Below are positions 3,945 through 35,830 of a stretch of DNA of 38,583 bases, piece by piece. Where the stretch lies: contig NC_068983.1 in the NCBI RefSeq assembly GCF_001194135.2, forward strand, positions 150,645,414 through 150,683,996, in the 5' to 3' direction. A program made the position numbers and the translations under genes. This stretch comes from Octopus bimaculoides (lineage: Eukaryota). Within the stretch, counting starts at the first letter, position 1. The number at the start of each line of letters is the position of its first letter. The notes under the pieces were generated by a model. The model was not told the origin of the DNA and did no database searches. It worked only from the letters and a program-made list of their open reading frames with translations.

Positions 3945-3969
3945 GATGATGATGATGGTGATGGTGATC

Positions 3970-4019
<50 letters not shown>

Positions 4020-4585
4020 AATGACGATGATGATGATGATGATGATGACGTTGATGATGATGATGATGGTGATGATGACGATGATGATGATGACGATGAT
4101 GATGATGGTGATGATGATGATGATAATGATGATGATGATGATGATGGTGATGATGAATATGAGGATGACGGCTGTCATTATCATCATCATTGACATCAGC
4201 ACCACCGCCAGCTTCATCATCATTATCCTCCTCCTCNNNNNNNNNNNNNNNNNNNNNNNNNNNNNNNNNNNNNNNNNNNNNNNNNNNNNNNNNNNNNNNN
4301 NNNNNNNNNNNNNNNNNNNNNNNNNNNNNNNNNNNNNNNNNNNNNNNNNNNNNNNNNNNNNNNNNNNNNNNNNNNNNNNNNNNNNNNNNNNNNNNNNNNN
4401 NTCCTCCTCCTCCTCCTCCTCCTCCTCCTCCTCATCACAACCACCATCATTGCTACCAGCGCTAGCACCAGCACCAGCAGCACCGCCGCCACCATGATAA
4501 TGATGATGATGATGATGATGATGATGATTATGATGATGATGATGATGATGATGATCATCATCATCATCATCATCATTATCATCAC
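3945..4585. repeat. Imperfect (GAT)n, (CCT)n and (GAT/CAT)n trinucleotide arrays around gap 4237-4401
   Basis: Direct read. Confidence 0.92.
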
Positions 4586-4734
4586 CCAATACAAATACCA
4601 ATAACATACAATAACAAGTAAATCATGATAAAAACATATAGTTTGAAAATTGATCTTAAAGTTTGACCTGGGGATGTTGTCATATAGCCTTTGATGTTTC
4701 CAATACACATCTCTCTGCACTTTCTTCCCACCTC

Positions 4735-4863
4735 TCTGTCTCTGTCTGTCTCTTTCTATCTGTCTGTCTCTGTCTATCTGTCTCTGTCTATCTGTCTCTC
4801 TCTCACACGCATACACACACTCTTTCTCTTTCTCATTGTCTCTGATAATATATACATACACTC

Positions 4864-4894
<31 letters not shown>

Positions 4895-4952
4895 TGTATG
4901 TATGTATGTATGTATGTATGTATGTGTGTGTGTGTATATATATATATATATG
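4735..4952. repeat. Compound (TCTG/TC), (TATG)n and (TA)n microsatellite
   Basis: Direct read; pure (TATG)n at ~4866-4924. Confidence 0.9.
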
Positions 4953-5174
4953 TAAGTATATTATTTAATGTACACAGTATACAGTCACGAGCTATTAATA
5001 ATTTCATGCTTTGGAGATGTTGTCTAGGCAAGTTTCCATAACATGTCTTGTGTCTCCAGGAGATACAAGACGTGTTATCAAAACTGTATACTGTATACAT
5101 TAAATGATATTTATCTCTCACCGGATGGAGTGCTTTTTTGGTTGACCTTACCTTAACGGAAGAGTAAATTATAT

Positions 5175-5310
5175 GCAGGCATGACTGTGTGTGAAGGTTC
5201 TGGGTTTAGTGCTTTGCGCCACCTTGGGCAAATATCTTCTACTATAGCCTCGGGCCGACTAAAGTTTTGTGAGTGGATTTGGTAGACGGAAACTGAAAGA
5301 AGCTCGTCAT
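5175..5310 (+). mobile_element. CORE-type tRNA-derived SINE, 5' part (octopus OR-like), internally deleted head
   Basis: GCAGGCATGACTGTGTG...CCACCTTGGGCAAATATCTTCTACTATAGCCTCGGGCCGAC...GGAAACTGAAAGAAGC. CCTTGGGCAA is the CORE-domain start; homologous to 7399, 17296 and 26136 copies. Confidence 0.8.
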
Positions 5311-5414
5311 GTCTCGCACATATGGTTGTGATGCATGTACCTGCTGTAGCCTTATGAGACGGGTAGTCATGATGGGTATACTGGACTTCGTATATTTGTA
5401 CCCCAGCGTTACGT
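5311..5414 (+). mobile_element. Retroelement 3'-end module ending in (TAA)n, copy 1
   Basis: Homologous to 12030-12160, sharing the exact 24-mer AGACGGGTAGTCATGATGGGTATA. Followed directly by (TAA)n. Confidence 0.75.
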
Positions 5415-5428
5415 TAATAATAATAATG

Positions 5429-5490
<62 letters not shown>

Positions 5491-5501
5491 TAATAATAAT
5501 A
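5415..5501. repeat. (TAA)n array
   Basis: Direct read. Confidence 0.98.
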
Positions 5502-6000
5502 ATGCAGTTGGAGAAATGTAAGATTTTGTGGGACTTACCTACTCAACCGCACAAGCAGTTAGAATATAATAGATCAGACATAACAGTTATAGATAAGGAA
5601 AAGCGAAGTTGCTTACTTGTTAACCCATCATGCCCTTTTGATTCCAGGATCGTGAAGAAAGAGGAAGAAAAAACAAAACAAAACAAAACAAAAAATACAA
5701 TCCCTTAAAATTTTAAATAGGAAGAATTTGGAGCATGGAAACAGTAAAGCTCATGCCTATAATAATTGGTGCGCTGGGAACAGTAAGTAAAGATGCAAAC
5801 ACATGGCTGAAAGGGATTGATATAGATTGCCTGGTAGAGCTCCTACAGAAAGTTTGTCCCTTAAGGACAGCAAGGATTATCAGGTGGGTTTTAAGCACTT
5901 AAAAGACTACTGGAAACTTGTGGATACCTAAGATTATAGGTAGTAACCCATTACCCACATAAATCCTACCAGGAATAAGACCGAATCTGAACCAAACCAA
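5502..6000 (+). mobile_element. R4/Dong-type non-LTR retrotransposon fragment E1 (RLE endonuclease + 3' UTR), pseudogenised
   Basis: Translates KILWDLPTQPHKQLEYNRSDITVIDKEKRSCLLVNPSCPFD...KEEEK, frameshift, then KYNPLKF*IGRIWSME...PIIIGALGTV...LLQKVCPLRTARIIRWVLST* (stop 5900-5902). This matches the R4/Dong RLE pattern. (TAA)n on both sides. Confidence 0.92.
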
Positions 6001-6053
6001 AATAATAATAATAATAATGATGATGATAATAATAATAATAATAAAAATAATAA
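6001..6053. repeat. (TAA)n/(TGA)n array between E1 and E2
   Basis: Direct read. Confidence 0.95.
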
Positions 6054-6312
6054 ATAAAAGCTAATAAACCGGATATTATTATTAAAGATCAGACAAAGAA
6101 GACGTGTTTATTAATTGACATGAGTATTCCCTCTGATCATAATATAGCGACGAAAGAATTTGACAAGATCAGTAAATATAAAGACTTGCTAATAGAAATT
6201 GGAAAAATGTGGCATCTCAAGGCGACTACCGTACCAGTGATTGTAGGATCTCTAGGAATGATAAAAAAAAAGGTACTGAAACCTATTTGAAAATGATACC
6301 AGGCCTATCATC
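6054..6312 (+). mobile_element. R4/Dong-type fragment E2 (RLE catalytic core), 3' end lost in gap
   Basis: IKANKPDIIIKDQTKKTCLLIDMSIPSDHNIATKEFDKISKYKDLLIEIGKMWHLKATTVPVIVGSLGMIKK, with intact PD..D..K..KY residues. The 5' end blends into the TAA array. Confidence 0.93.
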
Positions 6313-7306
6313 NNNNNNNNNNNNNNNNNNNNNNNNNNNNNNNNNNNNNNNNNNNNNNNNNNNNNNNNNNNNNNNNNNNNNNNNNNNNNNNNNNNNNNNN
6401 NNNNNNNNNNNNNNNNNNNNNNNNNNNNNNNNNNNNNNNNNNNNNNNNNNNNNNNNNNNNNNNNNNNNNNNNNNNNNNNNNNNNNNNNNNNNNNNNNNNN
6501 NNNNNNNNNNNNNNNNNNNNNNNNNNNNNNNNNNNNNNNNNNNNNNNNNNNNNNNNNNNNNNNNNNNNNNNNNNNNNNNNNNNNNNNNNNNNNNNNNNNN
6601 NNNNNNNNNNNNNNNNNNNNNNNNNNNNNNNNNNNNNNNNNNNNNNNNNNNNNNNNNNNNNNNNNNNNNNNNNNNNNNNNNNNNNNNNNNNNNNNNNNNN
6701 NNNNNNNNNNNNNNNNNNNNNNNNNNNNNNNNNNNNNNNNNNNNNNNNNNNNNNNNNNNNNNNNNNNNNNNNNNNNNNNNNNNNNNNNNNNNNNNNNNNN
6801 NNNNNNNNNNNNNNNNNNNNNNNNNNNNNNNNNNNNNNNNNNNNNNNNNNNNNNNNNNNNNNNNNNNNNNNNNNNNNNNNNNNNNNNNNNNNNNNNNNNN
6901 NNNNNNNNNNNNNNNNNNNNNNNNNNNNNNNNNNNNNNNNNNNNNNNNNNNNNNNNNNNNNNNNNNNNNNNNNNNNNNNNNNNNNNNNNNNNNNNNNNNN
7001 NNNNNNNNNNNNNNNNNNNNNNNNNNNNNNNNNNNNNNNNNNNNNNNNNNNNNNNNNNNNNNNNNNNNNNNNNNNNNNNNNNNNNNNNNNNNNNNNNNNN
7101 NNNNNNNNNNNNNNNNNNNNNNNNNNNNNNNNNNNNNNNNNNNNNNNNNNNNNNNNNNNNNNNNNNNNNNNNNNNNNNNNNNNNNNNNNNNNNNNNNNNN
7201 NNNNNNNNNNNNNNNNNNNNNNNNNNNNNNNNNNNNNNNNNNNNNNNNNNNNNNNNNNNNNNNNNNNNNNNNNNNNNNNNNNNNNNNNNNNNNNNNNNNN
7301 NNNNNN

Positions 7307-7307
<1 letters not shown>

Positions 7308-7398
<91 letters not shown>
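7308..7398. repeat. (TAA)n array after gap 6313-7307
   Basis: Direct read. Confidence 0.97.
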
Positions 7399-7399
<1 letters not shown>

Positions 7400-7580
7400 C
7401 GCATGGTTCCGGGTTCAGTCCCACTACGTGGCACCTTGGGCAAGAGTCTTCTGCTATAGCCTCGGCCGACCAAAGCCTTGTAAGTGGATTTGGTAGACGG
7501 AAACTGAAAGAAGCCCATCATATGTATATATATATGTATATGTGTGTATATGTTTCTGTGTTTGTGTTTGACCCCACCTC
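7399..7580 (+). mobile_element. CORE-type SINE lacking the first part of the head, with TA/TG linker
   Basis: CATGGTTCCGGGTTCAGTCCCACTACGTGGCACCTTGGGCAAG...GGAAACTGAAAGAAGCCC. Confidence 0.85.
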
Positions 7581-7590
7581 CTGTGTTTGT

Positions 7591-7744
7591 GAGAGGGAGG
7601 TAGTCGACTACATCGACTTCAGTACTTAACTGGTACTTATTTTATCGACCTCGAAAGGATGAAAGGCAAAGTCGACCTCAGAACATAGCGACGGGCAAAA
7701 TACCGTTAAGCATTTCGTCCAACGATTCTACCAGCTCGTGCCTT
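7591..7744 (-). mobile_element. SINE of GTCGACTTTGCCTTTCATCC type with 16-nt B-box deletion
   Basis: Collinear with 35589-35830 but lacks GGCGGA...GAACTC at 7679/7680; CTC microhomology at the join. Confidence 0.8.
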
Positions 7745-7967
7745 AACAACAACAACACCACCACNNNNNNNNNNNNNNNNNNNNNNNNNNNNNNNNNNNN
7801 NNNNNNNNNNNNNNNNNNNNNNNNNNNNNNNNNNNNNNNNNNNNNNNNNNNNNNNNNNNNNNNNNNNNNNNNNNNNNNNNNNNNNNNNNNNNNNNNNNNN
7901 NNNNNNNNNNNNNNNNNNNNNNNNNNNNNNNNNNNNNNNNNNNNNNNNNNNNNNNNNNNNNNNNNNN

Positions 7968-8009
<42 letters not shown>

Positions 8010-8224
8010 GAAACAAAGCAAAACGGAAAAGGAAACCAACAAGATAACAAAATAATAGAGACAAAGAAATAAAAACAATTATAGAAACAAGGAATTGTAT
8101 GTTGCACCTCTATTGTGTAACTCATTATTTAGCCCTCGGCTAGACGCCTCTAAATCCTTGATCTTTCCATATACCAAAGGAAGACTATCTGTTGCAAGAA
8201 CAAGTAAGACATGAAACGACAAGC

Positions 8225-8392
8225 ACATACATACATACATACATACATACATGTATATATATACATGCATACATACATGCATAGATACACACATATATGT
8301 ATACATACATGCATACTTGCGTACATACATGCAGCTATACATACATACATACATACTTATATACATACATAAATGCATACATATACGCATAC

Positions 8393-8460
<68 letters not shown>
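8225..8460. repeat. (CATA)n/(TA)n compound microsatellite
   Basis: Direct read. Confidence 0.9.
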
Positions 8461-8461
<1 letters not shown>

Positions 8462-8683
8462 AATCCCTACAAGTTGTCTGTAGGGGAGTCTGTGGAGGAA
8501 AAGATTAAGAGCAGCGCCAGTAGTAACAACAACAACATGACTGAAAATCCCAAAGGAAATAGCCAGCAACACATAACTACGAACAACAACAACAAGCAAC
8601 ATCAACAAAATCTATCGAACTTTTACCATCGATAATCTTTTCAGCCTCTGCGTTTGATAATAGTCAACAACAACAGCCACAGC

Positions 8684-8809
8684 AAGAAGAAGAAGAAGAA
8701 GAAGAAGAAGAAGAAGAAGAAGAAGAAGAAGAAGAAGAAGAAGAAGAAGAAGAAAAAGAAGAAGAAGAAGAAGAAGAAGACGAAGAAGAAGAAGAAGAAG
8801 AAGAAGAAG
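8684..8809. repeat. (GAA)n array, ~42 units with two interruptions
   Basis: Direct read; followed by degenerate (AAC/AGC)n to ~9030. Confidence 0.97.
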
Positions 8810-9045
8810 CAAACAACAAGAACAACAACAACATCAACAGTAACAACAACAACAGCAACAACACCAACTGTATGAACAGCAACAACAAATTTAACAGCGA
8901 CAGCAGCAAGAAGAATAACATCTGCAAAAGCAGCAAGCATGGTAAAAAAAGAATAAGAGTAACAACAACAACAACAACAGCAGCAGCAGCAACAATAACA
9001 ACAATAACAACAACAACAACACGAACAACAACGTCACGATCATTT

Positions 9046-9288
9046 TCCTTTCTTTTATAGGCACAAAGGCGGCAATCTGAGGGGTGGGGCGGTGCGGTGG
9101 TGCGGCGTTGGGGAGCTGGTCGATTACATCGACTCCCAGCGTTTACATAGTATTTGTTTCATTGACCTCCAAAAAAAGGGTGAAAGGCATATATCGATCT
9201 TGGTGGAATTTGAAGTCAGAACGTAAAAACGGACGAAATGTCGTTAAGTATTTTGTCCAGCATGGCAACGATTCTATCTCACCGTCTT
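9046..9288 (-). mobile_element. Decayed SINE, GTCGACTTTGCCTTTCATCC type, with tail type A (...GGCCTTGTGCCTATA)
   Basis: TCGATTACATCGAC...GAAAGGC...GGAATTTGAAGTCAGAACGT matches the family. TTTTATAGGCACAA is the reverse complement of the 17151 tail. Confidence 0.7.
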
Positions 9289-9323
9289 CAGCATCACTCT
9301 CATTAACACCCAAAATTAATAAA

Positions 9324-9338
9324 AATAATAATAATAAC

Positions 9339-9388
<50 letters not shown>

Positions 9389-9396
9389 TAATAATA
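9324..9396. repeat. (TAA)n array
   Basis: Direct read. Confidence 0.96.
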
Positions 9397-9406
9397 AAAA
9401 AAAAAA

Positions 9407-9583
9407 CAAATATATATAACATACAGAAAATTGCACTACTGGGCACTGCACACATCCTACGCAAAATACTTTCAATACAATAAAAATAAGAGCATCACAG
9501 CAAACCACAGCACATACCCAAGGCGCACAGAGCTGCGCTCGGTAGTGAAGTGAAAGCACGTTATAAAAATAAAACTACTGAAC
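9407..9583 (+). mobile_element. R4/Dong-type fragment E3 (last ~23 codons + 3' UTR)
   Basis: IYNIQKIALLGTAHILRKILSIQ* (stop 9481-9483) is homologous to the C-terminus of E4 (LLGTAHILRKTLSIQ*). ~100-nt UTR; (TAA)n on both sides. Confidence 0.9.
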
Positions 9584-9638
<55 letters not shown>

Positions 9639-9665
9639 GTAATAATAACGATAACAATAATAATA
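9584..9665. repeat. (TAA)n array between E3 and E4
   Basis: Direct read. Confidence 0.97.
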
Positions 9666-11206
9666 AGAGAGTATTACAGAAGAGTTAGACTAATATTAAA
9701 CACAGAACTTAATGTTAAAATTAAGATAATAGGGAAAAACACGCTATCCATACCACTTATAAATTACAGCTTCAACATGATAAACTGGAAGATCAGTGAA
9801 TTGCAAAACCTAGATAGAAAAACCAGAAAACTATTAACAACGTACCGAAGTCACCACCCCAAAGCAGACACAGACAGAATATATCTACCCCACTCAGAAG
9901 GAGGCCGTGGCCTGATACATAAAGAACTATCATAAAATAACAACAGTTGGACTAGGGATGTACTTAGAAACAAAAAGTGCAAGACTATTGTATGTAATAA
10001 AGCAGCACTAGAAAAAGAAAACGCGTTTCTCTGTACACAAGGAGGTGACAAATACAAAACAGAAACAAACTACACAGATAAAATGACCTCAGGTGACAAC
10101 ATAACAGAGACAAAAACAACATGAAAACAAGATTACAAAAGATACTGTAGAAAAAATAGAGAGAAAAATCACTCCATGGTCAATATCCTGCAAGGCTTGA
10201 CAGAGAGGAAGTGAAGTTAAGTAAAAGCCAACAGTTGCTCAAAAGCTCTGGACTAAAAGCTGAAACAGAAGGACTGATTCTCGCTGCATAAGACTAATTC
10301 TCGACTATAAACAATTATAATGGCAAAATAATGAAAACAGGCCCTAACACCAAATGCAGAATGTGCAACATCATCTCTGGCTGCCCAGTCCTTGCCAAAT
10401 CTGAATATATATACTTACACGACCGAGTAGGTAGTTATATCCATTGGACAATATGCCAACATTACAAAATCAAAACTGATAATAGGTGTGTCAAACAAGA
10501 TACAAGAAAACGACCAGGCCACAATCATCTAGGATGTGCTGGTTCAAACCGACAAAGAAATAAAAGCCAATCGCCTGGACATAATAACCAAGGATTGAAA
10601 AATAAAACCCACCTGCTTACTGATAGACATTGCAGTCCCCTCTGCTCAAATTATTGTCCAAAAAGAACTGGAGAAATTATCAAAGTACAAAGACCTCAAA
10701 ATTGAAGTATTTAAGATGTGGAGCATGAAGGTAAATATAATAGCAATTATAATTCGAGCATTGGGTGTGATAAAAAAACATATGAACAGAAATGTAGAAG
10801 CTATACCTGAATCCTCAACACTACACACTATCTAAAAATAACCCTGCTAGGAACAGCCCATATCCTACGCAAGACATTATCAATCCAATAATGCAACCTA
10901 AACTAAACAGCCCACAAATACAAGACACACTCTATACAGCATTTACGCAGTGAAATAAACTCCCACCATTAAGCCATGAAGACCAAAGCATTATACACTC
11001 AACACACAATACAAGAACACAACAAAAGACAGCACCACACCCCAAGAAAATAAAACAAAAACTAACACATTACAGTACCAGGAAGAGTTCGCACACTCCC
11101 AACAACAGGAAAGAACACACAATGCTGCACACACCCTAACAGCACGGAGGTGTAGCAGGCGATGCAGTAGAAATTTACCTGAAACAACTAAATGATGAAC
11201 AATTAT

Positions 11207-11210
<4 letters not shown>
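9666..11210 (+). mobile_element. R4/Dong-type fragment E4 (RT thumb/linker, CCHC knuckle remnant, RLE, ~320-nt 3' UTR), pseudogenised
   Basis: REYYRRVRLILNTELN...NWKISELQNLDRKTRKLLTTYRSHHPKADTDRIYLPHSEGGRGL; GLKAETEGLILAA; KCRMC-(His deleted)-IISGCPVLAKSEY..HDRV; KANRLDII..CLLIDIAVP..KELEKLSKYKDLKIEV. Multiple stops and frameshifts; ORF end 10889-10891. Confidence 0.95.

Positions 11211-11274
<64 letters not shown>
11211..11274. repeat. Pure (TAA)n array between E4 and E5
   Basis: Direct read. Confidence 0.98.
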
Positions 11275-12029
11275 TTGGTACCACCTAAAGGAAAAATCCC
11301 AAACAATGAACTACCTCCTCTTCATGGATGATTTGAAAATGCATGACAAGGATGAGACACAAGTGAGTTCCTTGGTGAACACGGTCTACTGTTTTAGTAC
11401 TGATATTAGAATGGAATTTGGACTCAAGAAGTGCGGAATAATCTACCTAAAAAGGGACAAGATACAGTCCCTAGCAGGGATATAATTACCGAATAGAGAC
11501 TTGATTAAGCAAACTGAAACGGAAGGATACAAATGCCATGGTATTCAACGAAATAATGGAGCAACTGAGGATGCAGTATTTCCGAAGACTGTGGTTAGTG
11601 TTGTGCTCAAAATTGACTGAATGGAATAAAACCCAAGCAGTTAATACGTAGGCGATAGCATCGCTTCGGTATGGAGCGGGAATTATAAAATGCCAAAAGA
11701 GAGTGGTGAAGAAAATGGATACTAAGAACAGAAAAATTTTGACAGTAGACGGAGCCTTCCACCTTAAAATATCAGAACCTTGCCATTGAGTTACAGAGAC
11801 TGTGGAAGGTGCGAGGAAGATATATCCCTGTAGTTATAGGTGCATTAGAAACTATCCTTAAAGATTTGAACAGGTGGGTAAAGGAAATAGGCATAAAGAC
11901 CAGTTTAGTACAGCTCCAGAAAACAGTGTTATTAGGGACAACTAGGATACTTAGGATGGTTCTTGGCATCTAAGGTTACTTGTTGTAGCTCGACGTTAGG
12001 ATATTTTCTTTTCCAACAGTCTAATCACC
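11275..12029 (+). mobile_element. R4/Dong-type fragment E5 (RT catalytic region fused to RLE C-terminus by internal deletion)
   Basis: MNYLLFMDDLKMH...VYCFSTDIRMEFGLKKC (FMDD at 11321-11332), ...MDTKNRKILTVDGAFH | KYQNLAIELQRLWKV..IPVVIGAL...LQKTVLLGTTRILRMVLGI* (stop 11971-11973). Confidence 0.93.
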
Positions 12030-12160
12030 GTGTCGCGTACATATGGCTGTGATTCATGTGCCTGGTGTACCCTTATCAGACGGGTAGTCATGATGGGTAT
12101 ATTGGGCTTCGTATATTTTACCCCAGTGTTAGTTTGATGGCATGCGCTGCGCTCTCACCC
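12030..12160 (+). mobile_element. Retroelement 3'-end module ending in (TAA)n, copy 2
   Basis: Homologous to 5311-5414 and ~28 nt longer at the 3' end. Abuts the E5 UTR with no TAA array between. Confidence 0.75.
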
Positions 12161-12188
12161 AATAATATTAATATTCATAATAATGATG

Positions 12189-12234
<46 letters not shown>

Positions 12235-12305
12235 TAATAATAATAATAATAATAATGATAATAATAATGATAATAATAATAATATTGATAATAATAATAA
12301 TAATA
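12161..12305. repeat. Imperfect (TAA)n array
   Basis: Direct read. Confidence 0.93.
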
Positions 12306-12395
12306 AAAAATTGAATGCTTGATTGTATCCCAACATGCCCACAGCCTTCTGTTCGGTAACAAGTAAAATTACAAAGAATATACATGTACAAATGT

Positions 12396-12396
12396 C

Positions 12397-12428
<32 letters not shown>

Positions 12429-12429
12429 C

Positions 12430-12461
<32 letters not shown>

Positions 12462-12727
12462 CGACGATGATGATGATGATGATAACGATGACGACGACGA
12501 CGATGATGATTATGATGATGATGATGATGATGATGACGATGATGACGACGGTGATGATGACGATGATGATGATGATAACGATGACGACGACGACAATGAT
12601 GATGATGATGATGATGATGATGATAACGATGACGACGTCGACGATGATGATTACGATGATGATGATGATGATGATGATGATGAAGATGATGATGATGATG
12701 ATGATGATAACGATGACGACGACGACA

Positions 12728-12767
<40 letters not shown>

Positions 12768-12770
12768 CGA
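12396..12770. repeat. (GAT/GAC)n array with higher-order periodicity
   Basis: GATAACGATGACGAC variants start at 12481, 12574, 12622 and 12706. Confidence 0.92.
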
Positions 12771-13702
12771 GTACGAACGAAAACGACGGAGATAAAATTC
12801 CTTTATTTGCAACGAGGGGGTCTCGACAACATTTACAAAGACAAAAAACAAAGACAAACAAAAGAAAAAAAAAAAAGCTTCCGCGACAAACATACAATAA
12901 CAAAACAAATGAAATAAAAAAAAAAGAGTCAAGTAAAACAAACAACCCATACTCCATCACATCATTTCTGTCAACCCCATCCCCACCCCGCGAAAAAACA
13001 ATAACAAAAACAAAAGCAAAGACAAAGCAAAAAAAAAACAACCAAAAACCAATAAACAAATATAATAAGTAAATGGCAAAATAAAATTTAAAATAAAGAT
13101 ACGGCAACAATCAAGAAGGCAATTTGAAAAAATATAACCACCGACAGAACGCGTTTTCTTTCGTCTCGTTTTCGTTTAAATTATTTTGTACCTGAGGGTA
13201 ATAAACAACAGTTGGCTGTATCGAGAAGGTTCTTTCAGTTTTGGTAAATACTGTCTGTATGTCCCTATATGATGTAGATGGTGGCGTTGTCATAGTCGTC
13301 GTCGTCATCGTCGGCGGTGGTGGTAGTGGTGGTAGTTGTAGTACTAGTAGCAATTGTTGTTGTTGTTGTTGCTATTGTTGTTGTTGTTGATCTTTCCAGA
13401 TTCGGCGCTAAATAAGTTTGCAAAGAAGCGAAGGCTCATGGGATACCTTTCTTATATTGAAAGCAATGTTTTCCATTTCAGTTAATAGTGCATACTTTCG
13501 CATACATACATACATACATACATACACACACACACACTCACACACACATACACGTACCATACATTCACACATGCATGTAACTGGCGCACACATATACACA
13601 TATGCACGCAGACCCAAACGCATATTGAAATATTCTACGCATATTCAACATAAGATATTTGAACGACAAAACGCACATATACATATATCATAATTTGAAG
13701 TA

Positions 13703-13704
<2 letters not shown>

Positions 13705-13778
<74 letters not shown>

Positions 13779-17297: not shown

Positions 17298-17410
17298 GCT
17301 TCTTTCAGTTTCTGTCTATCAAATCCACCTACAAGGCTTTGGTTGGCCCGAAGCTATAGTAGAAGACACTTGAACCCGGAACCATGTGGCTGGGAACAAC
17401 ACTTGCGCTT
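17296..17410 (-). mobile_element. CORE-type SINE with ~25-nt deletion, abutting the previous SINE
   Basis: GCTTCTTTCAGTTTCTGTCTATCAAATCCAC...GCTATAGTAGAAGACACTTG|AACCCGGAACCATGTGG; the CCCAAGGTGCC..GGGACTG segment is missing. Confidence 0.8.
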
Positions 17411-24114: not shown

Positions 24115-24157
<43 letters not shown>

Positions 24158-24228
24158 TGTTGTATAATATTATTATTATTATTACTATTATCTTGTTGTT
24201 GTTGCTGTTGTTTTTGTTGTTGTTGTTT
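24090..24228. repeat. (TTG)n/(TTA)n compound array
   Basis: Direct read. Confidence 0.92.
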
Positions 24229-26135: not shown

Positions 26136-26320
26136 ATTCTTTTACTCGTTTCAGTCATTTGACTGGGACCATGCTGGAGCACCGCCTTTAGTCGAACAAA
26201 TCGTCCCTAATTCTATCGGTCTCTTTTGCCGAAGCGGTAAGTTACGGGGATGTAAACACACCAGCATCGGTTGTCACATACGACGAGCTTCTTTCAGTTT
26301 CCGTCTACCAAATCCACTCA
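26136..26320 (-). mobile_element. CORE-type SINE 3' half with tail type C (...CCAGCATGG..CAGTCAAATGACTGAAAC), linker deleted
   Basis: GACGAGCTTCTTTCAGTTTCCGTCTACCAAATCCACTCA is the CORE-family body. It is joined to TTTACTCGTTTCAGTCATTTGACTG...CACACCAGCATCGGTTGTCA. Confidence 0.8.
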
Positions 26321-26670
26321 GAAATACGTGGAGTTATGCTGCAGTTGTCTTGCTTTTATTGAGAGAACATGGCTCAAATTAGTCTCTGTTTTCGAAACGT
26401 TTTGATTAGCCGAGGATTATCACGTGATCAAATTTAGAAAATTTTTTAAAAGTTTCCCGCTACGTCCGTTCTTTAACGTCATGTAACAATATGTTTGGCG
26501 CCGTAAGTTAAAGCTGGTTAAGTCTTTAAAAGTCGTTAAGTCTTTAAGTTAAAGTCGGTTAAGTCTTTAAAAATGTAACAATAAAAAGAACTAAACGAAT
26601 CCCAGTGCATGTTCAACTTCTTTGTTTATATTTCTGCTCGTGTGGAATAAAATAACTTTGTTTTCTGTAT

Positions 26671-28395: not shown

Positions 28396-28434
28396 ATGCT
28401 GATGATGATGATGATAATAATAATAATAATAATA

Positions 28435-28472
<38 letters not shown>

Positions 28473-28482
28473 AATGATGATG

Positions 28483-28546
<64 letters not shown>

Positions 28547-28588
28547 CAACAACAACAGCAACAATAATAATAATAATAATACTAATAC

Positions 28589-28633
<45 letters not shown>

Positions 28634-28650
28634 TAATAATAATAATAATG
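28396..28650. repeat. (ATT/ATC)n array on minus strand, tail of the adjacent LINE-like end
   Basis: Direct read; begins immediately after AATAAAGAAAT on the minus strand. Confidence 0.93.
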
Positions 28651-30753: not shown

Positions 30754-30812
<59 letters not shown>

Positions 30813-30835
30813 CATTATTATTATCATTATTATCA
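30705..30835 (+). mobile_element. Very short LINE-like 3' end plus (ATT)n tail
   Basis: TAGCCCTTGTGGCCAATAAAGAAACGAA followed by (ATT)n at ~30754-30835. Confidence 0.65.
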
Positions 30836-35588: not shown

Positions 35589-35830
35589 TATTTCTTATTT
35601 CTTTATTGCCCACAAGGGGCTAAACATAGAGGGGACAAATAAGGACAGACAAAGGGGTTAAGTCGATTACATCAACCCCAGTGCGAAACTGGTACTTAAT
35701 TTATCGACCCCCGAAAGGATAAAAGGCAAAGTCGACCTAGGCGGATTTTGAACTCAGAACGTAACGGCAGACGAAATACCGCTAAGCATTTCGCCCGGCG
35801 TACTAACGTTTCTTCCAGCTCGCCGCCTTG
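35589..35830 (-). mobile_element. Full-length tRNA-derived SINE (MetaSINE-like central block) with LINE-like tail type B and TSD
   Basis: Head GGCGGCGAGCTGGAAGAAACGTTAG, B box GAGTTCAAAATCC, block GTCGACTTTGCCTTTTATCCTTTCGGGGGTCGATAAATTAAGTACCAG, tail TAGCCCCTTGTGGGCAATAAAGAAATAAGAAATA. Flanked by TAAACAC(T/A)ATTTC at 35582-35594 and 35831-35843. Confidence 0.92.

What the first reader, a model, noticed from the sequence alone, without database searches (positions are those of the whole stretch)
5415..12305. Stack of five different R4/Dong-type retrotransposons using (TAA)n arrays as a shared landing pad
Seen: E1-E5 all lie on +, each starts directly from a (TAA)n array, and E1, E3 and E4 end in one (E2's end is in a gap, E5 ends via the 12030 module). 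The four visible 3' UTRs differ and the RLE peptides are divergent, so these are separate families rather than tandem copies. No RLE fragment was noticed outside TAA context. Established: R4-clade Dong elements target TAA repeats. Inference: each insertion splits and regenerates same-orientation arrays, so several families keep re-targeting one locus, which could drive the genome's TAA abundance.
Basis: partly seen in the sequence, partly recalled or inferred. Interest (0 to 1): 0.72.

Follow-up and report, generated by a model that had tools for sequence, protein, structure and literature searches.

The report
Dong-like retrotransposons stacked in TAA repeats
Five dead, front-truncated copies of TAA-repeat-targeting "Dong-type" jumping genes from at least four families sit head-to-tail between (TAA)n microsatellites; this is the expected footprint of a known kind of site-specific retrotransposon, not a new mechanism.

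Summary
Seven + strand (TAA)n arrays (5415-12306) bracket five + strand fragments. Each encodes part of a reverse transcriptase / CCHC / restriction-like endonuclease (RLE) protein. Homology-defined 5' starts lie 0-24 bp from an array end, and the four visible 3' ends run into an array. No other RLE fragment exists in the window.

The fragments are not duplicates. They share 33-51% amino-acid identity and no DNA similarity, except a 57-nt E3/E4 match. This gives at least four families; E3 is too short to call.

The RLE profile matches the RLE of solved R2 proteins. Relatives in other genomes form 20-kb same-strand stacks, including intact elements, with precise 5' ends directly after TAA repeats. 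The literature already states that Dong elements target (TAA)n in insects, molluscs and cnidarians.

Caveats:
- The "stack" is 2 + 3 copies on two contigs joined only by scaffolding.
- E2's 3' end lies in a gap.
- Assignment to the R4/Dong clade rests on target and domain order, not an RT phylogeny.
- The claim about genome-wide TAA abundance is untested.

Side finding: a SINE-like unit (5196-5414) carries E5's 3' UTR module and ends in the first TAA array.

Ordinary biology, low novelty.

The parts
5196..5414 (+). SINE-like unit upstream of the first array. The head (5196-5310) is shared with copies at 7405-7521, 17372-17298(-) and 26324-26282(-). The tail (5310-5411) is 88% identical to E5's 3' UTR module. 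The unit runs straight into the (TAA)n array.
   Evidence: blastn self-comparison; alignment A1
5415..5503 (+). (TAA)29 array, 95% pure. It is the tail of the SINE-like unit and the 5' flank of E1.
   Evidence: TRF
5504..6000 (+). E1: a 5'-truncated copy holding the whole RLE domain (reference aa 1000-1127). It has one frameshift, one stop and degenerate catalytic residues (NRSD, VNPSCP). Stop codon at 5900-5902; 3' UTR 5903-6000.
   Evidence: translations; tblastn to the intact relative L2A; alignment
6001..6053 (+). (TAA)n array interrupted by GAT units, lying between E1 and E2.
   Evidence: TRF; sequence
6054..6312 (+). E2: a 5'-truncated copy starting at the IKANKPD motif of the RLE (reference aa 1020 to about 1100). 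It has one frameshift. The 3' end is lost in the gap.
6313..7306 (.). Assembly gap (994 N, estimated length). It must hold E2's last ~28 codons and its 3' UTR. Any further content is unknown.
7307..7398 (+). Pure (TAA)30 array on a 458-bp contig. It is followed at 7399 by a 5'-truncated SINE head (7405-7521).
9317..9397 (+). (TAA)27 array forming the 5' flank of E3. Upstream lies the 5' end of a minus-strand copy of a second SINE-like family, so this array is not the tail of a + strand element.
9398..9583 (+). E3: an extreme 5' truncation. About 24 nt of A-rich filler comes first, then the last 25 codons (9406-9480), a stop at 9481-9483 and a 100-nt 3' UTR.
9584..9666 (+). (TAA)28 array between E3 and E4.
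9667..11210 (+). E4: a 5'-truncated copy running from just after the RT domain (reference aa 736) through the linker, a CCHC knuckle with an 8-residue deletion (about 10355-10400) and the RLE, to the stop at 10889-10891. It carries several frameshifts and at least 3 stops. 3' UTR 10892-11210.
11211..11274 (+). Pure (TAA)21 array between E4 and E5.
11275..12160 (+). E5: a 5'-truncated copy starting in the RT just before the FMDD box (reference aa 630). An internal deletion of ~255 residues near 11760-11767 removes the linker, the CCHC and the catalytic half of the RLE. The RLE C-half follows at 11767-11970, with the stop at 11971-11973. The 3' UTR (11974-12160) contains the 12031-12131 module shared with the SINE-like unit.
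12161..12306 (+). (TAA)49 array, 87% pure, forming the 3' end of the stack.

Best explanation
The region holds remnants of TAA-microsatellite-specific non-LTR retrotransposons. They are of the type with a restriction-like endonuclease (RLE), most likely the R4/Dong clade.

**Proposed mechanism.**
1. The element's protein nicks a (TAA)n/(TTA)n array in one strand-specific orientation.
2. The (UAA)n at the 3' end of the element RNA pairs with the nicked repeat, and reverse transcription is primed from the target (TPRT).
3. Synthesis often stops early, giving 5'-truncated copies.
4. The new copy ends up flanked by TAA repeats on both sides and brings its own (TAA)n tail.

Every insertion therefore splits one array into two same-orientation arrays that remain targets. 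Different co-resident families using the same target pile up head-to-tail.

**Shown:**
- the anatomy: arrays, strand, junctions and truncation points;
- that at least four families are involved;
- RT/CCHC/RLE homology;
- the same architecture, with intact elements and precise 5' ends, in other genomes.

**Inferred from established R2 and Dong biology:**
- the nick-and-prime mechanism;
- tail annealing;
- that the copies arrived one after another.

All five copies here are dead, through truncation, frameshifts, stops or an internal deletion.
For: **In the window.**
- 5 of 5 homology-defined 5' starts lie 0-24 bp after a + strand TAA array. 4 of 4 visible 3' ends run into an array, and all are on the TAA strand.
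- Random placement never gave more than 1 of 5.
- E3's upstream array is not the tail of any + strand element.
- The truncation points all differ: reference aa 630, 736, 1000, 1020 and 1110.
- Identities are 33-51% with no DNA similarity, so these are neither duplicates nor one family.

**Protein identity.**
- The RLE profile matches the RLE domain of solved R2 proteins 9nl3_A and 9dou_A (E = 1.2e-3 and 1.6e-3) across the catalytic motifs.
- An intact relative hits R2 proteins best (E = 3e-24, against 2e-12 for L1) and carries RVT_1.

**Relatives in other genomes.**
- All 16 protein C-termini in L001-L004 are on one strand.
- 11 of them have (TAA)>=3 starting 77-218 bp after the end of the protein match, which lies within a few codons of the stop. 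3 more have (TAA)2.
- Full-length 5' ends TGTCCTGGG..., GGTTCTAAAG... and AGGTG... recur directly after TAA.

**Literature.**
- Dong targets (TAA)n in Bombyx, Anopheles and Biomphalaria (PMC3812793).
Against: - No RT phylogeny with Dong, R4, Rex6 or HERO references could be run, so the clade name is not proven.
- All window copies lack the N-terminus and 5' end, where R4/Dong hallmarks lie (a Myb/SANT-like domain and an HDV-like ribozyme).
- In relatives, Rfam found no ribozyme, and the N-terminal profile gave no significant PDB match.
- The order and independence of the insertions cannot be read from one locus.
- Junctions run through 53-146 bp microsatellites in a gap-rich scaffold, so some adjacencies could be assembly joins.
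- Three other TAA/TTA arrays in the window (24118, 28414, 30754) have no detectable element, though two of them abut gaps.
Confidence: 0.85

Rival explanations
1. One-shot concatenation. Some or all neighbouring fragments were joined in a single TPRT event. The reverse transcriptase reached the broken 5' end of one RNA and jumped to the (UAA)n 3' end of another family's RNA. This would give same-orientation chains separated by TAA repeats without repeated targeting of the locus.
For: - Template jumping between RNAs is documented for R2 reverse transcriptase in vitro (my own knowledge, not checked here).
- It predicts exactly the head-to-tail, same-strand layout with TAA between members.
- Nothing in the window dates the members separately.
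Against: - Array purities differ along the stack, from 87% to 100%. Decay also differs between members: E4 has at least 3 stops and several frameshifts, E2 has one frameshift. This hints at different ages, but only weakly.
- In L002 and L003 long full-length elements with complete 5' UTRs are stacked. That would need many successive full-length jumps.
- The first member of each chain would still have needed TAA targeting.
Confidence: 0.1
2. Assembly artefact. Contigs were joined falsely through (TAA)n repeats, because many copies genome-wide end in identical microsatellite. Under this reading the adjacency of E3-E4-E5 or of E1-E2 is not real.
For: - The window has 16 N gaps, and many contig ends lie in microsatellites.
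- The arrays between elements are 53-83 bp, which is within the range where short-read graphs tangle.
- The two sub-stacks are linked only by scaffolding.
Against: - The same architecture is present on multi-megabase contigs of other genomes (L001-L003).
- Even if neighbours were mis-joined, each fragment would still begin and end in TAA repeats, so TAA targeting would stand.
Confidence: 0.08
3. Tails only. The elements merely carry (TAA)n 3' tails, as some non-specific LINEs do, and insert without sequence specificity. The clustering would then be passive accumulation in AT-rich junk DNA.
For: - Each upstream array of E2, E4 and E5 could be read as the tail of the upstream neighbour.
- The window is generally repeat-dense.
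Against: - Five of five 5' ends fall exactly at arrays, against a chance of about 0.1-0.6% per end.
- E3's upstream array is not a + strand element's tail.
- Strand agreement is complete in the window and in 16 of 16 relatives.
- Precise full-length 5' ends recur right after TAA in relatives.
- Published target specificity of Dong.
Confidence: 0.03
4. Same mechanism, different clade. The fragments belong to HERO or another RLE-bearing clade with microsatellite specificity, rather than to R4/Dong.
For: - HERO contains microsatellite-specific families (PMC4640811).
- Both Hero and Dong-R4 are annotated in Octopus vulgaris, a mollusc (PMC13282606).
- No reference sequences were available for a tree.
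- Pfam has no model for this RLE.
Against: - (TAA)n is the published target of Dong in molluscs, insects, cnidarians and an ostracod.
- Full-length relatives have a conserved N-terminal domain without zinc fingers, as described for R4/Dong (PMC7998251).
Confidence: 0.12
5. Segmental duplication, or one family in tandem copies.
For: Only the repeated layout of array, element, array.
Against: - There is no DNA similarity among E1-E5 apart from 57 nt at 75% between E3 and E4.
- Peptide identity is 33-51%.
- The truncation points and 3' UTRs all differ.
Confidence: 0.01

Closest known systems
Dong (Bombyx mori) and Dong-like elements DongAg (Anopheles) and DongBg (Biomphalaria), R4 clade
   Same: Both have an RT followed by a C-terminal restriction-like endonuclease. 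Both insert into (TAA)n microsatellites in a fixed orientation, with TAA repeats at both junctions. Both occur in molluscs, arthropods and cnidarians.
   Different: The window copies are truncated, decayed and unnamed, and their clade position was not tested by phylogeny. At least four divergent lineages share one locus. Multi-family stacking did not appear in the papers I could read, though it follows directly from a shared target.
R4 (Ascaris) and R2 (insects, birds): rDNA-specific RLE LINEs
   Same: The domain order is the same. The RLE catalytic motifs align with solved R2 proteins, and the RT is closest to R2 among solved structures. TPRT at a repeated, dispensable target is the shared strategy.
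   Different: The target here is a microsatellite, not the 28S gene. Relatives have no N-terminal zinc fingers. RT identity to R2 is only about 25%.
HERO clade
   Same: It is an RLE-bearing LINE clade in which some families are microsatellite-specific.
   Different: Most HERO families are not target-specific. No reference was available to compare.
Telomere-repeat-specific LINE arrays (TRAS/SART in Bombyx) and R1/R2 in rDNA (from my own knowledge)
   Same: Several unrelated families share one repeated target and accumulate head-to-tail in a fixed orientation.
   Different: Those elements mostly use an AP-type endonuclease (TRAS, SART, R1). Their targets are telomeric or rDNA repeats that the cell itself regenerates. 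Here the element's own tail regenerates the target.

Membership tests
RLE-bearing non-LTR retrotransposons (R2/R4/HERO/NeSL/CRE group) | Reverse-transcriptase domain | tested here: met
   E5 keeps the C-terminal part of the RT with the FMDD box. It matches reference aa 630-718 of an intact relative by tblastn at E = 1.7e-21. That relative has RVT_1 at E = 2.5e-27. The E5 fragment alone is below Pfam's threshold (E = 0.097).
RLE-bearing non-LTR retrotransposons (R2/R4/HERO/NeSL/CRE group) | PD-(D/E)XK restriction-like endonuclease C-terminal to the RT | tested here: met
   A profile of 32 relatives hits the RLE domain of solved R2 proteins 9nl3_A and 9dou_A at E = 1.2e-3 and 1.6e-3. The alignment covers (K/R)PD ... 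D ... E.K..KY. E2 and E4 keep these motifs, E1 has them degenerate, and E5 has lost the catalytic half.
RLE-bearing non-LTR retrotransposons (R2/R4/HERO/NeSL/CRE group) | CCHC zinc knuckle between the RT and the RLE | tested here: met
   E4 has C-R-M-C ... S-G-C with an 8-residue deletion at about 10355-10400. Relatives have CRLC....H.VSGC. There is a weak zf-RVT hit in an intact relative (E = 0.0012).
R4/Dong clade | Insertion into (TAA)n in one fixed orientation, with TAA at both junctions | tested here: met
   5 of 5 5' junctions and 4 of 4 visible 3' junctions meet this, all on the TAA strand. The same holds in relatives, including full-length copies.
R4/Dong clade | RT-domain phylogeny grouping with Dong, R4 and Rex6 | not tested
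   No reference sequences could be reached: protein database names are uninformative; paper supplements hold none; and the window copies lack most of the RT.
R4/Dong clade | N-terminal Myb/SANT-like domain without zinc fingers (PMC7998251) | tested here: inconclusive
   This is not testable in the window, because all copies are 5'-truncated. Full-length relatives share a conserved Trp-rich domain of about 80 residues with no Cys/His fingers. Its profile gave no significant PDB match and no Pfam match.
R4/Dong clade | HDV-like self-cleaving ribozyme at the 5' end (PMC3774820) | tested here: inconclusive
   The window copies lack 5' ends. Rfam found nothing in L002 or L003 at gathering thresholds. 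Over L002 1-4450 it found nothing relevant at E <= 5. Such ribozymes are easily missed by these models.
HERO clade | RT-domain phylogeny grouping with HERO | not tested
   No references were available.
SINE mobilised by a partner LINE (for the unit at 5196-5414) | 3' tail derived from the partner LINE's 3' end | tested here: met
   5310-5411 is 88% identical to 12031-12131 in E5's 3' UTR, and both are followed by (TAA)n. The last ~43 nt of E5's UTR are absent from the SINE-like copy.
SINE mobilised by a partner LINE (for the unit at 5196-5414) | Many copies sharing the same head-tail join; pol III (tRNA-like) head | tested here: not met
   Only one copy with this join exists in the window. Three other head copies continue into different sequence. 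ARAGORN and Rfam do not call the head a tRNA. Two exact-match scans of the metagenome collection found no further copies.

The most novel reading that the evidence does not exclude
(TAA)n arrays and their Dong-type residents form a self-propagating niche. Each insertion regenerates the target, so several anciently diverged lineages coexist in the same arrays across phyla. The KYKDL/IKANRPD and KYQDL/ARRPD types are found together both here and in crustacean-like genomes. A SINE has also captured one lineage's 3' UTR module (5310-5411 matching 12031-12131) to ride the TAA-targeting machinery. If that were general, a measurable share of this genome's TAA microsatellites, and part of its SINE load, would be products of RLE-type LINEs.
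Probability: 0.25. Interest if true: 0.45.

Novelty: new member of a known kind. Interest (0 to 1): 0.2.

Why it matters
It matters mainly for annotation. The region is dead repeat DNA whose layout is fully explained by a known class of site-specific LINE. It is not evidence of a gene, a regulatory module or a new mobile-element type.

It is a clean small example of how a target-specific retrotransposon regenerates its own target. It also shows how several families can share one 'safe harbour'.

If the SINE-like unit with E5's tail proves to be a real family, it would be an example of a SINE parasitising an RLE-type, microsatellite-targeting LINE. That would be of modest interest to transposon specialists.

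The relatives found in passing are intact 1128-1302-aa elements stacked over 20 kb. They would be better material than this window for studying how (TAA)n is recognised.

Tried and rejected
- **Pfam on the RLE peptides:** no family.
- **Naming the clade through the protein database:** hits are unnamed metagenome ORFs or 'uncharacterized protein' from Penaeus.
- **Reference Dong/R4/Rex6/HERO sequences:** none in the supplements of PMC5035012 or PMC4640811. The original Dong paper is not held.
- **Rfam and ARAGORN on the window, L002 and L003:** no tRNA-like SINE head and no HDV-like ribozyme.
- **PDB profile search with the conserved N-terminal domain of relatives:** nothing significant.
- **Exact-match scans of the metagenome collection** for the E5/SINE module and for the SINE head: 0 hits each.
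- **Text search for the SINE head sequence in papers:** 0 hits.
- **Consensus fold of the two copies of the 3' module:** two sequences are too few and nothing decisive came out.
- **ORF scan of the whole window for a host gene to identify the organism:** nothing usable. The source organism therefore stays unidentified. From memory, the SINE head resembles an abundant octopus repeat. That is a lead only, not a result.
- **Rejected readings:** segmental duplication or a single family, and tails-only random insertion.

Full report
**What is there.**

The window is a gap-rich (16 runs of N), microsatellite- and SINE-dense eukaryotic scaffold. Between 5415 and 12306, TRF finds seven + strand TAA-type arrays:
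- 5415-5503
- 6001-6053
- 7307-7398
- 9317-9397
- 9584-9666
- 11211-11274
- 12161-12306

Five segments between them translate, always in + frames, into pieces of one protein type. That type has the end of a reverse transcriptase, a linker with the motif YLP..EGGRGL, a CCHC knuckle and a C-terminal domain. The C-terminal domain carries ILWD ... (N/R)(K/R)PD ... D..(V/I)P ... E.K..KY..L ... GALG ... LLGTA.ILRK.

The table maps each fragment onto an intact 1128-residue relative, L002:299-3682.

| Fragment | Reference residues covered | Note |
|---|---|---|
| E1 | 1000-1127 | whole RLE domain |
| E2 | 1020 to about 1100 | then the gap |
| E3 | 1110-1127 | C-terminus only |
| E4 | 736-1127 | linker, CCHC and RLE |
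| E5 | 630 to about 805, then 1060-1127 | internal deletion of ~255 residues |

All five are 5'-truncated at different points. All are inactivated by frameshifts, stops or deletion.

**Is the association with TAA real?**

- Homology-defined 5' starts lie 0-24 bp after the end of a + strand array in 5 of 5 cases.
- E1, E3, E4 and E5 reach the next array after 3' UTRs of 98, 100, 319 and 187 nt.
- About 0.13% of positions lie within 5 bp after an array. In 200,000 random placements no trial had more than one of five ends abutting an array.
- tblastn with all five peptides finds no other copy on either strand.
- Three further TAA/TTA arrays (24118-24191, 28414-28649, 30754-30833) have no recognisable element. 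Two of them abut gaps.

**The gaps.**

- E2 runs into gap 6313-7306 while still about 28 codons short of its stop.
- The far side of that gap is pure (TAA)30 from its first base. There is nothing there to be in frame with, and continuity cannot be shown.
- At least about 170 bp are truly missing. The rest of the estimated 994 N is unknown.
- Gap 7765-7967 lies between (CAA/CAC)n and (AT)n and touches no element.
- E1/E2 are on contig 4402-6312 and E3-E5 on contig 7968-13778. The 'stack of five' is therefore two sub-stacks joined by scaffolding. About 1.9 kb of SINE copies and other microsatellites lie between them.

**Are they different families?**

Yes for E1, E2, E4 and E5.
- blastn with 9-nt words finds no similarity among them.
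- RLE identities are 33-51%.
- E2 and E4 fall in an 'IKANRPD / KYKDLEIE' lineage. E5 falls nearer a 'KYQDL' lineage. E1 is a deep branch.
- Both main lineages also occur side by side in the relatives' stacks.

E3 matches E4 at 75% over 57 nt of coding sequence but has an unrelated 3' UTR. It is too short to assign. Segmental duplication and tandem copies of one family are excluded.

**What the protein is.**

- Pfam has no model for the C-terminal domain.
- A profile of 32 relatives hits the restriction-like endonuclease domain of solved R2 proteins first: 9nl3_A at E = 1.2e-3 and 9dou_A at E = 1.6e-3. The alignment covers the catalytic KPD ... D ... E.K..KY motifs.
- An intact relative hits R2 proteins best overall (E = 3e-24, against 2e-12 for L1 ORF2p). 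It carries RVT_1 at E = 2.5e-27.
- The elements are therefore RLE-type LINEs of the R2 group.

**Relatives elsewhere.**

The window's own genome is not in the protein collection; the best hit is 60% identical. Contigs carrying relatives were nonetheless informative.

- **L001** shows an RLE fragment, then (TAA)8, then RT...RLE, then (TAA)23, then another RLE fragment. It also shows a 3' UTR, then (TAA)28, then a 5'-truncated RT.
- **L002 and L003** come from one ENA sample. Their nearest named proteins are from Penaeus shrimps. They are 20-kb runs of 6 and about 9 elements, all on one strand, including intact 1128- and 1302-residue ORFs.
- **Junctions.** Every junction in those runs is (TAA)2-19. 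Three distinct full-length 5' ends recur immediately after TAA: TGTCCTGGGTATGAC..., GGTTCTAAAG... and AGGTG....
- **C-termini.** Of 16 C-termini, all share one strand. 11 have (TAA)>=3 starting 77-218 bp after the end of the protein match, which lies within a few codons of the stop, and 3 more have (TAA)2.

The 5' junctions, not only the tails, are TAA, and stacking of several families is the normal habit of these elements.

**Comparison with what is known.**

- TAA microsatellites are the published target of Dong in Bombyx, Anopheles and the snail Biomphalaria (PMC3812793).
- R4/Dong elements have an RT plus an RLE and no N-terminal zinc fingers, and Dong has a 5' ribozyme.
- Dong-R4 LINEs are abundant and recently active in Octopus vulgaris, with several families (PMC13282606).
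- Target, orientation and domain order therefore fit R4/Dong.
- Not tested: an RT phylogeny, for lack of references.
- Inconclusive: the N-terminal domain and the ribozyme.
- HERO, which has some microsatellite-specific families, remains a minor alternative for the clade name. It is not an alternative for the mechanism.

**Mechanism.**

The most likely sequence of events is as follows.
1. The endonuclease nicks the repeat in a strand-specific way.
2. The (UAA)n 3' end of the RNA pairs with the nicked repeat, and target-primed reverse transcription follows.
3. Reverse transcription often stops early, leaving a 5'-truncated copy.
4. The new copy lies between two same-orientation TAA arrays, which remain targets.
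5. Co-resident families therefore accumulate head-to-tail.

The anatomy is shown. The biochemical steps are inferred from R2 and Dong.

Rivals:
- A single event with template jumps between RNAs (about 0.1). This is not excluded, because the members cannot be dated here.
- False assembly joins through TAA repeats (about 0.08). This would not remove the TAA association of each fragment.
- Tails-only random insertion (about 0.03). This is contradicted by the 5' junctions.

The suggestion that these elements drive the genome's TAA abundance is untested. In this window 608 of 998 bp of TAA/TTA array lie in the stack.

**Side finding.**

- The 102-nt '12030 module' of E5's 3' UTR (12031-12131) is 88% identical to 5310-5411.
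- That stretch is the tail of a SINE-like unit. Its head (5196-5310) recurs at 7405-7521, 17372-17298(-) and 26324-26282(-). In those copies the head continues into different sequence.
- The unit runs straight into the first TAA array, in the same orientation as the LINEs.
- It may be a SINE subfamily that borrowed a Dong-type tail, or a one-off chimera. One copy cannot decide, and no further copies were found.

**Verdict.**

It describes known behaviour of a known class of element, so novelty and interest are low.

Noticed in passing
window 5196-5414 and 12031-12131: A SINE-like head (5196-5310) is joined to a 102-nt tail that is 88% identical to E5's 3' UTR module, and it ends in the first (TAA)n array. 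It could be a SINE using a Dong-type LINE tail, or a single chimera.
   Followed up: partly
window 7405-7521(+), 17298-17372(-), 26282-26324(-): Further copies of the same SINE-like head, each continuing into a (TATG/TA)n microsatellite or other sequence. The copy at 7399 is 5'-truncated and starts directly after the pure (TAA)30 array. ARAGORN and Rfam do not call the head a tRNA.
   Followed up: partly
window 7595-7740(+), 9111-9290(+), 35661-35822(+): A second repeat family, about 70-73% alike. By eye its tRNA-like end faces left-to-right on the minus strand. The 9111-9290 copy is followed upstream by long (AAC)n/(AAG)n arrays at 8684-9032.
   Followed up: no
window 4958-5110: A MITE-like unit: 28-nt terminal inverted repeats (4958-4985 and 5083-5110, 93% complementary) enclosing 97 nt, lying just upstream of the SINE-like unit.
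   Followed up: no
window 11760-11767: E5 has an internal deletion of ~255 codons that joins the post-RT linker directly to the second half of the endonuclease domain. It is unknown whether this marks a non-autonomous subfamily or a deletion after insertion.
   Followed up: partly
window 9398-9420: About 24 nt of A-rich sequence (AAAAAAAAAAACAAATATATATAAC...) lie between the TAA array and the first recognisable codon of E3. They could be untemplated 5'-junction filler or decayed coding sequence.
   Followed up: no
L002 1-20393 and L003 1-20573 (ENA ERZ25067903; nearest named proteins from Penaeus): 20-kb same-strand stacks of 6 and about 9 Dong-like elements, some with intact 1128- and 1302-aa ORFs. 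They are separated by (TAA)2-19, and three recurrent precise 5' ends follow TAA directly. These look like recently active elements.
   Followed up: partly
L001 5356-7378 (-): A different RLE-type LINE (CPFC...H..NGC knuckle, HRKPDIILID motif, RVT_1) lies on the opposite strand inside the Dong-like cluster and is not flanked by TAA. It is probably another clade.
   Followed up: no
relatives P0062-P0181, N-terminal residues ~40-125: A conserved Trp-rich domain of about 80 residues (KW.KE.N..VMECYY ... GYR.RM..IW ... TEQRL.DQAR.I.KNGWLS..ELEEI) with no zinc-finger cysteines or histidines. It fits the Myb/SANT-like domain reported for R4/Dong, but the profile search gave no significant match.
   Followed up: partly
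window 12397-12767, 3945-4168 and 28396-28484: Long (GAT)n/(ATG)n arrays, up to 124 units. Some sit directly next to or interleaved with TAA arrays, and GAT units also interrupt the arrays at 6001-6053 and 12161-12306.
   Followed up: no
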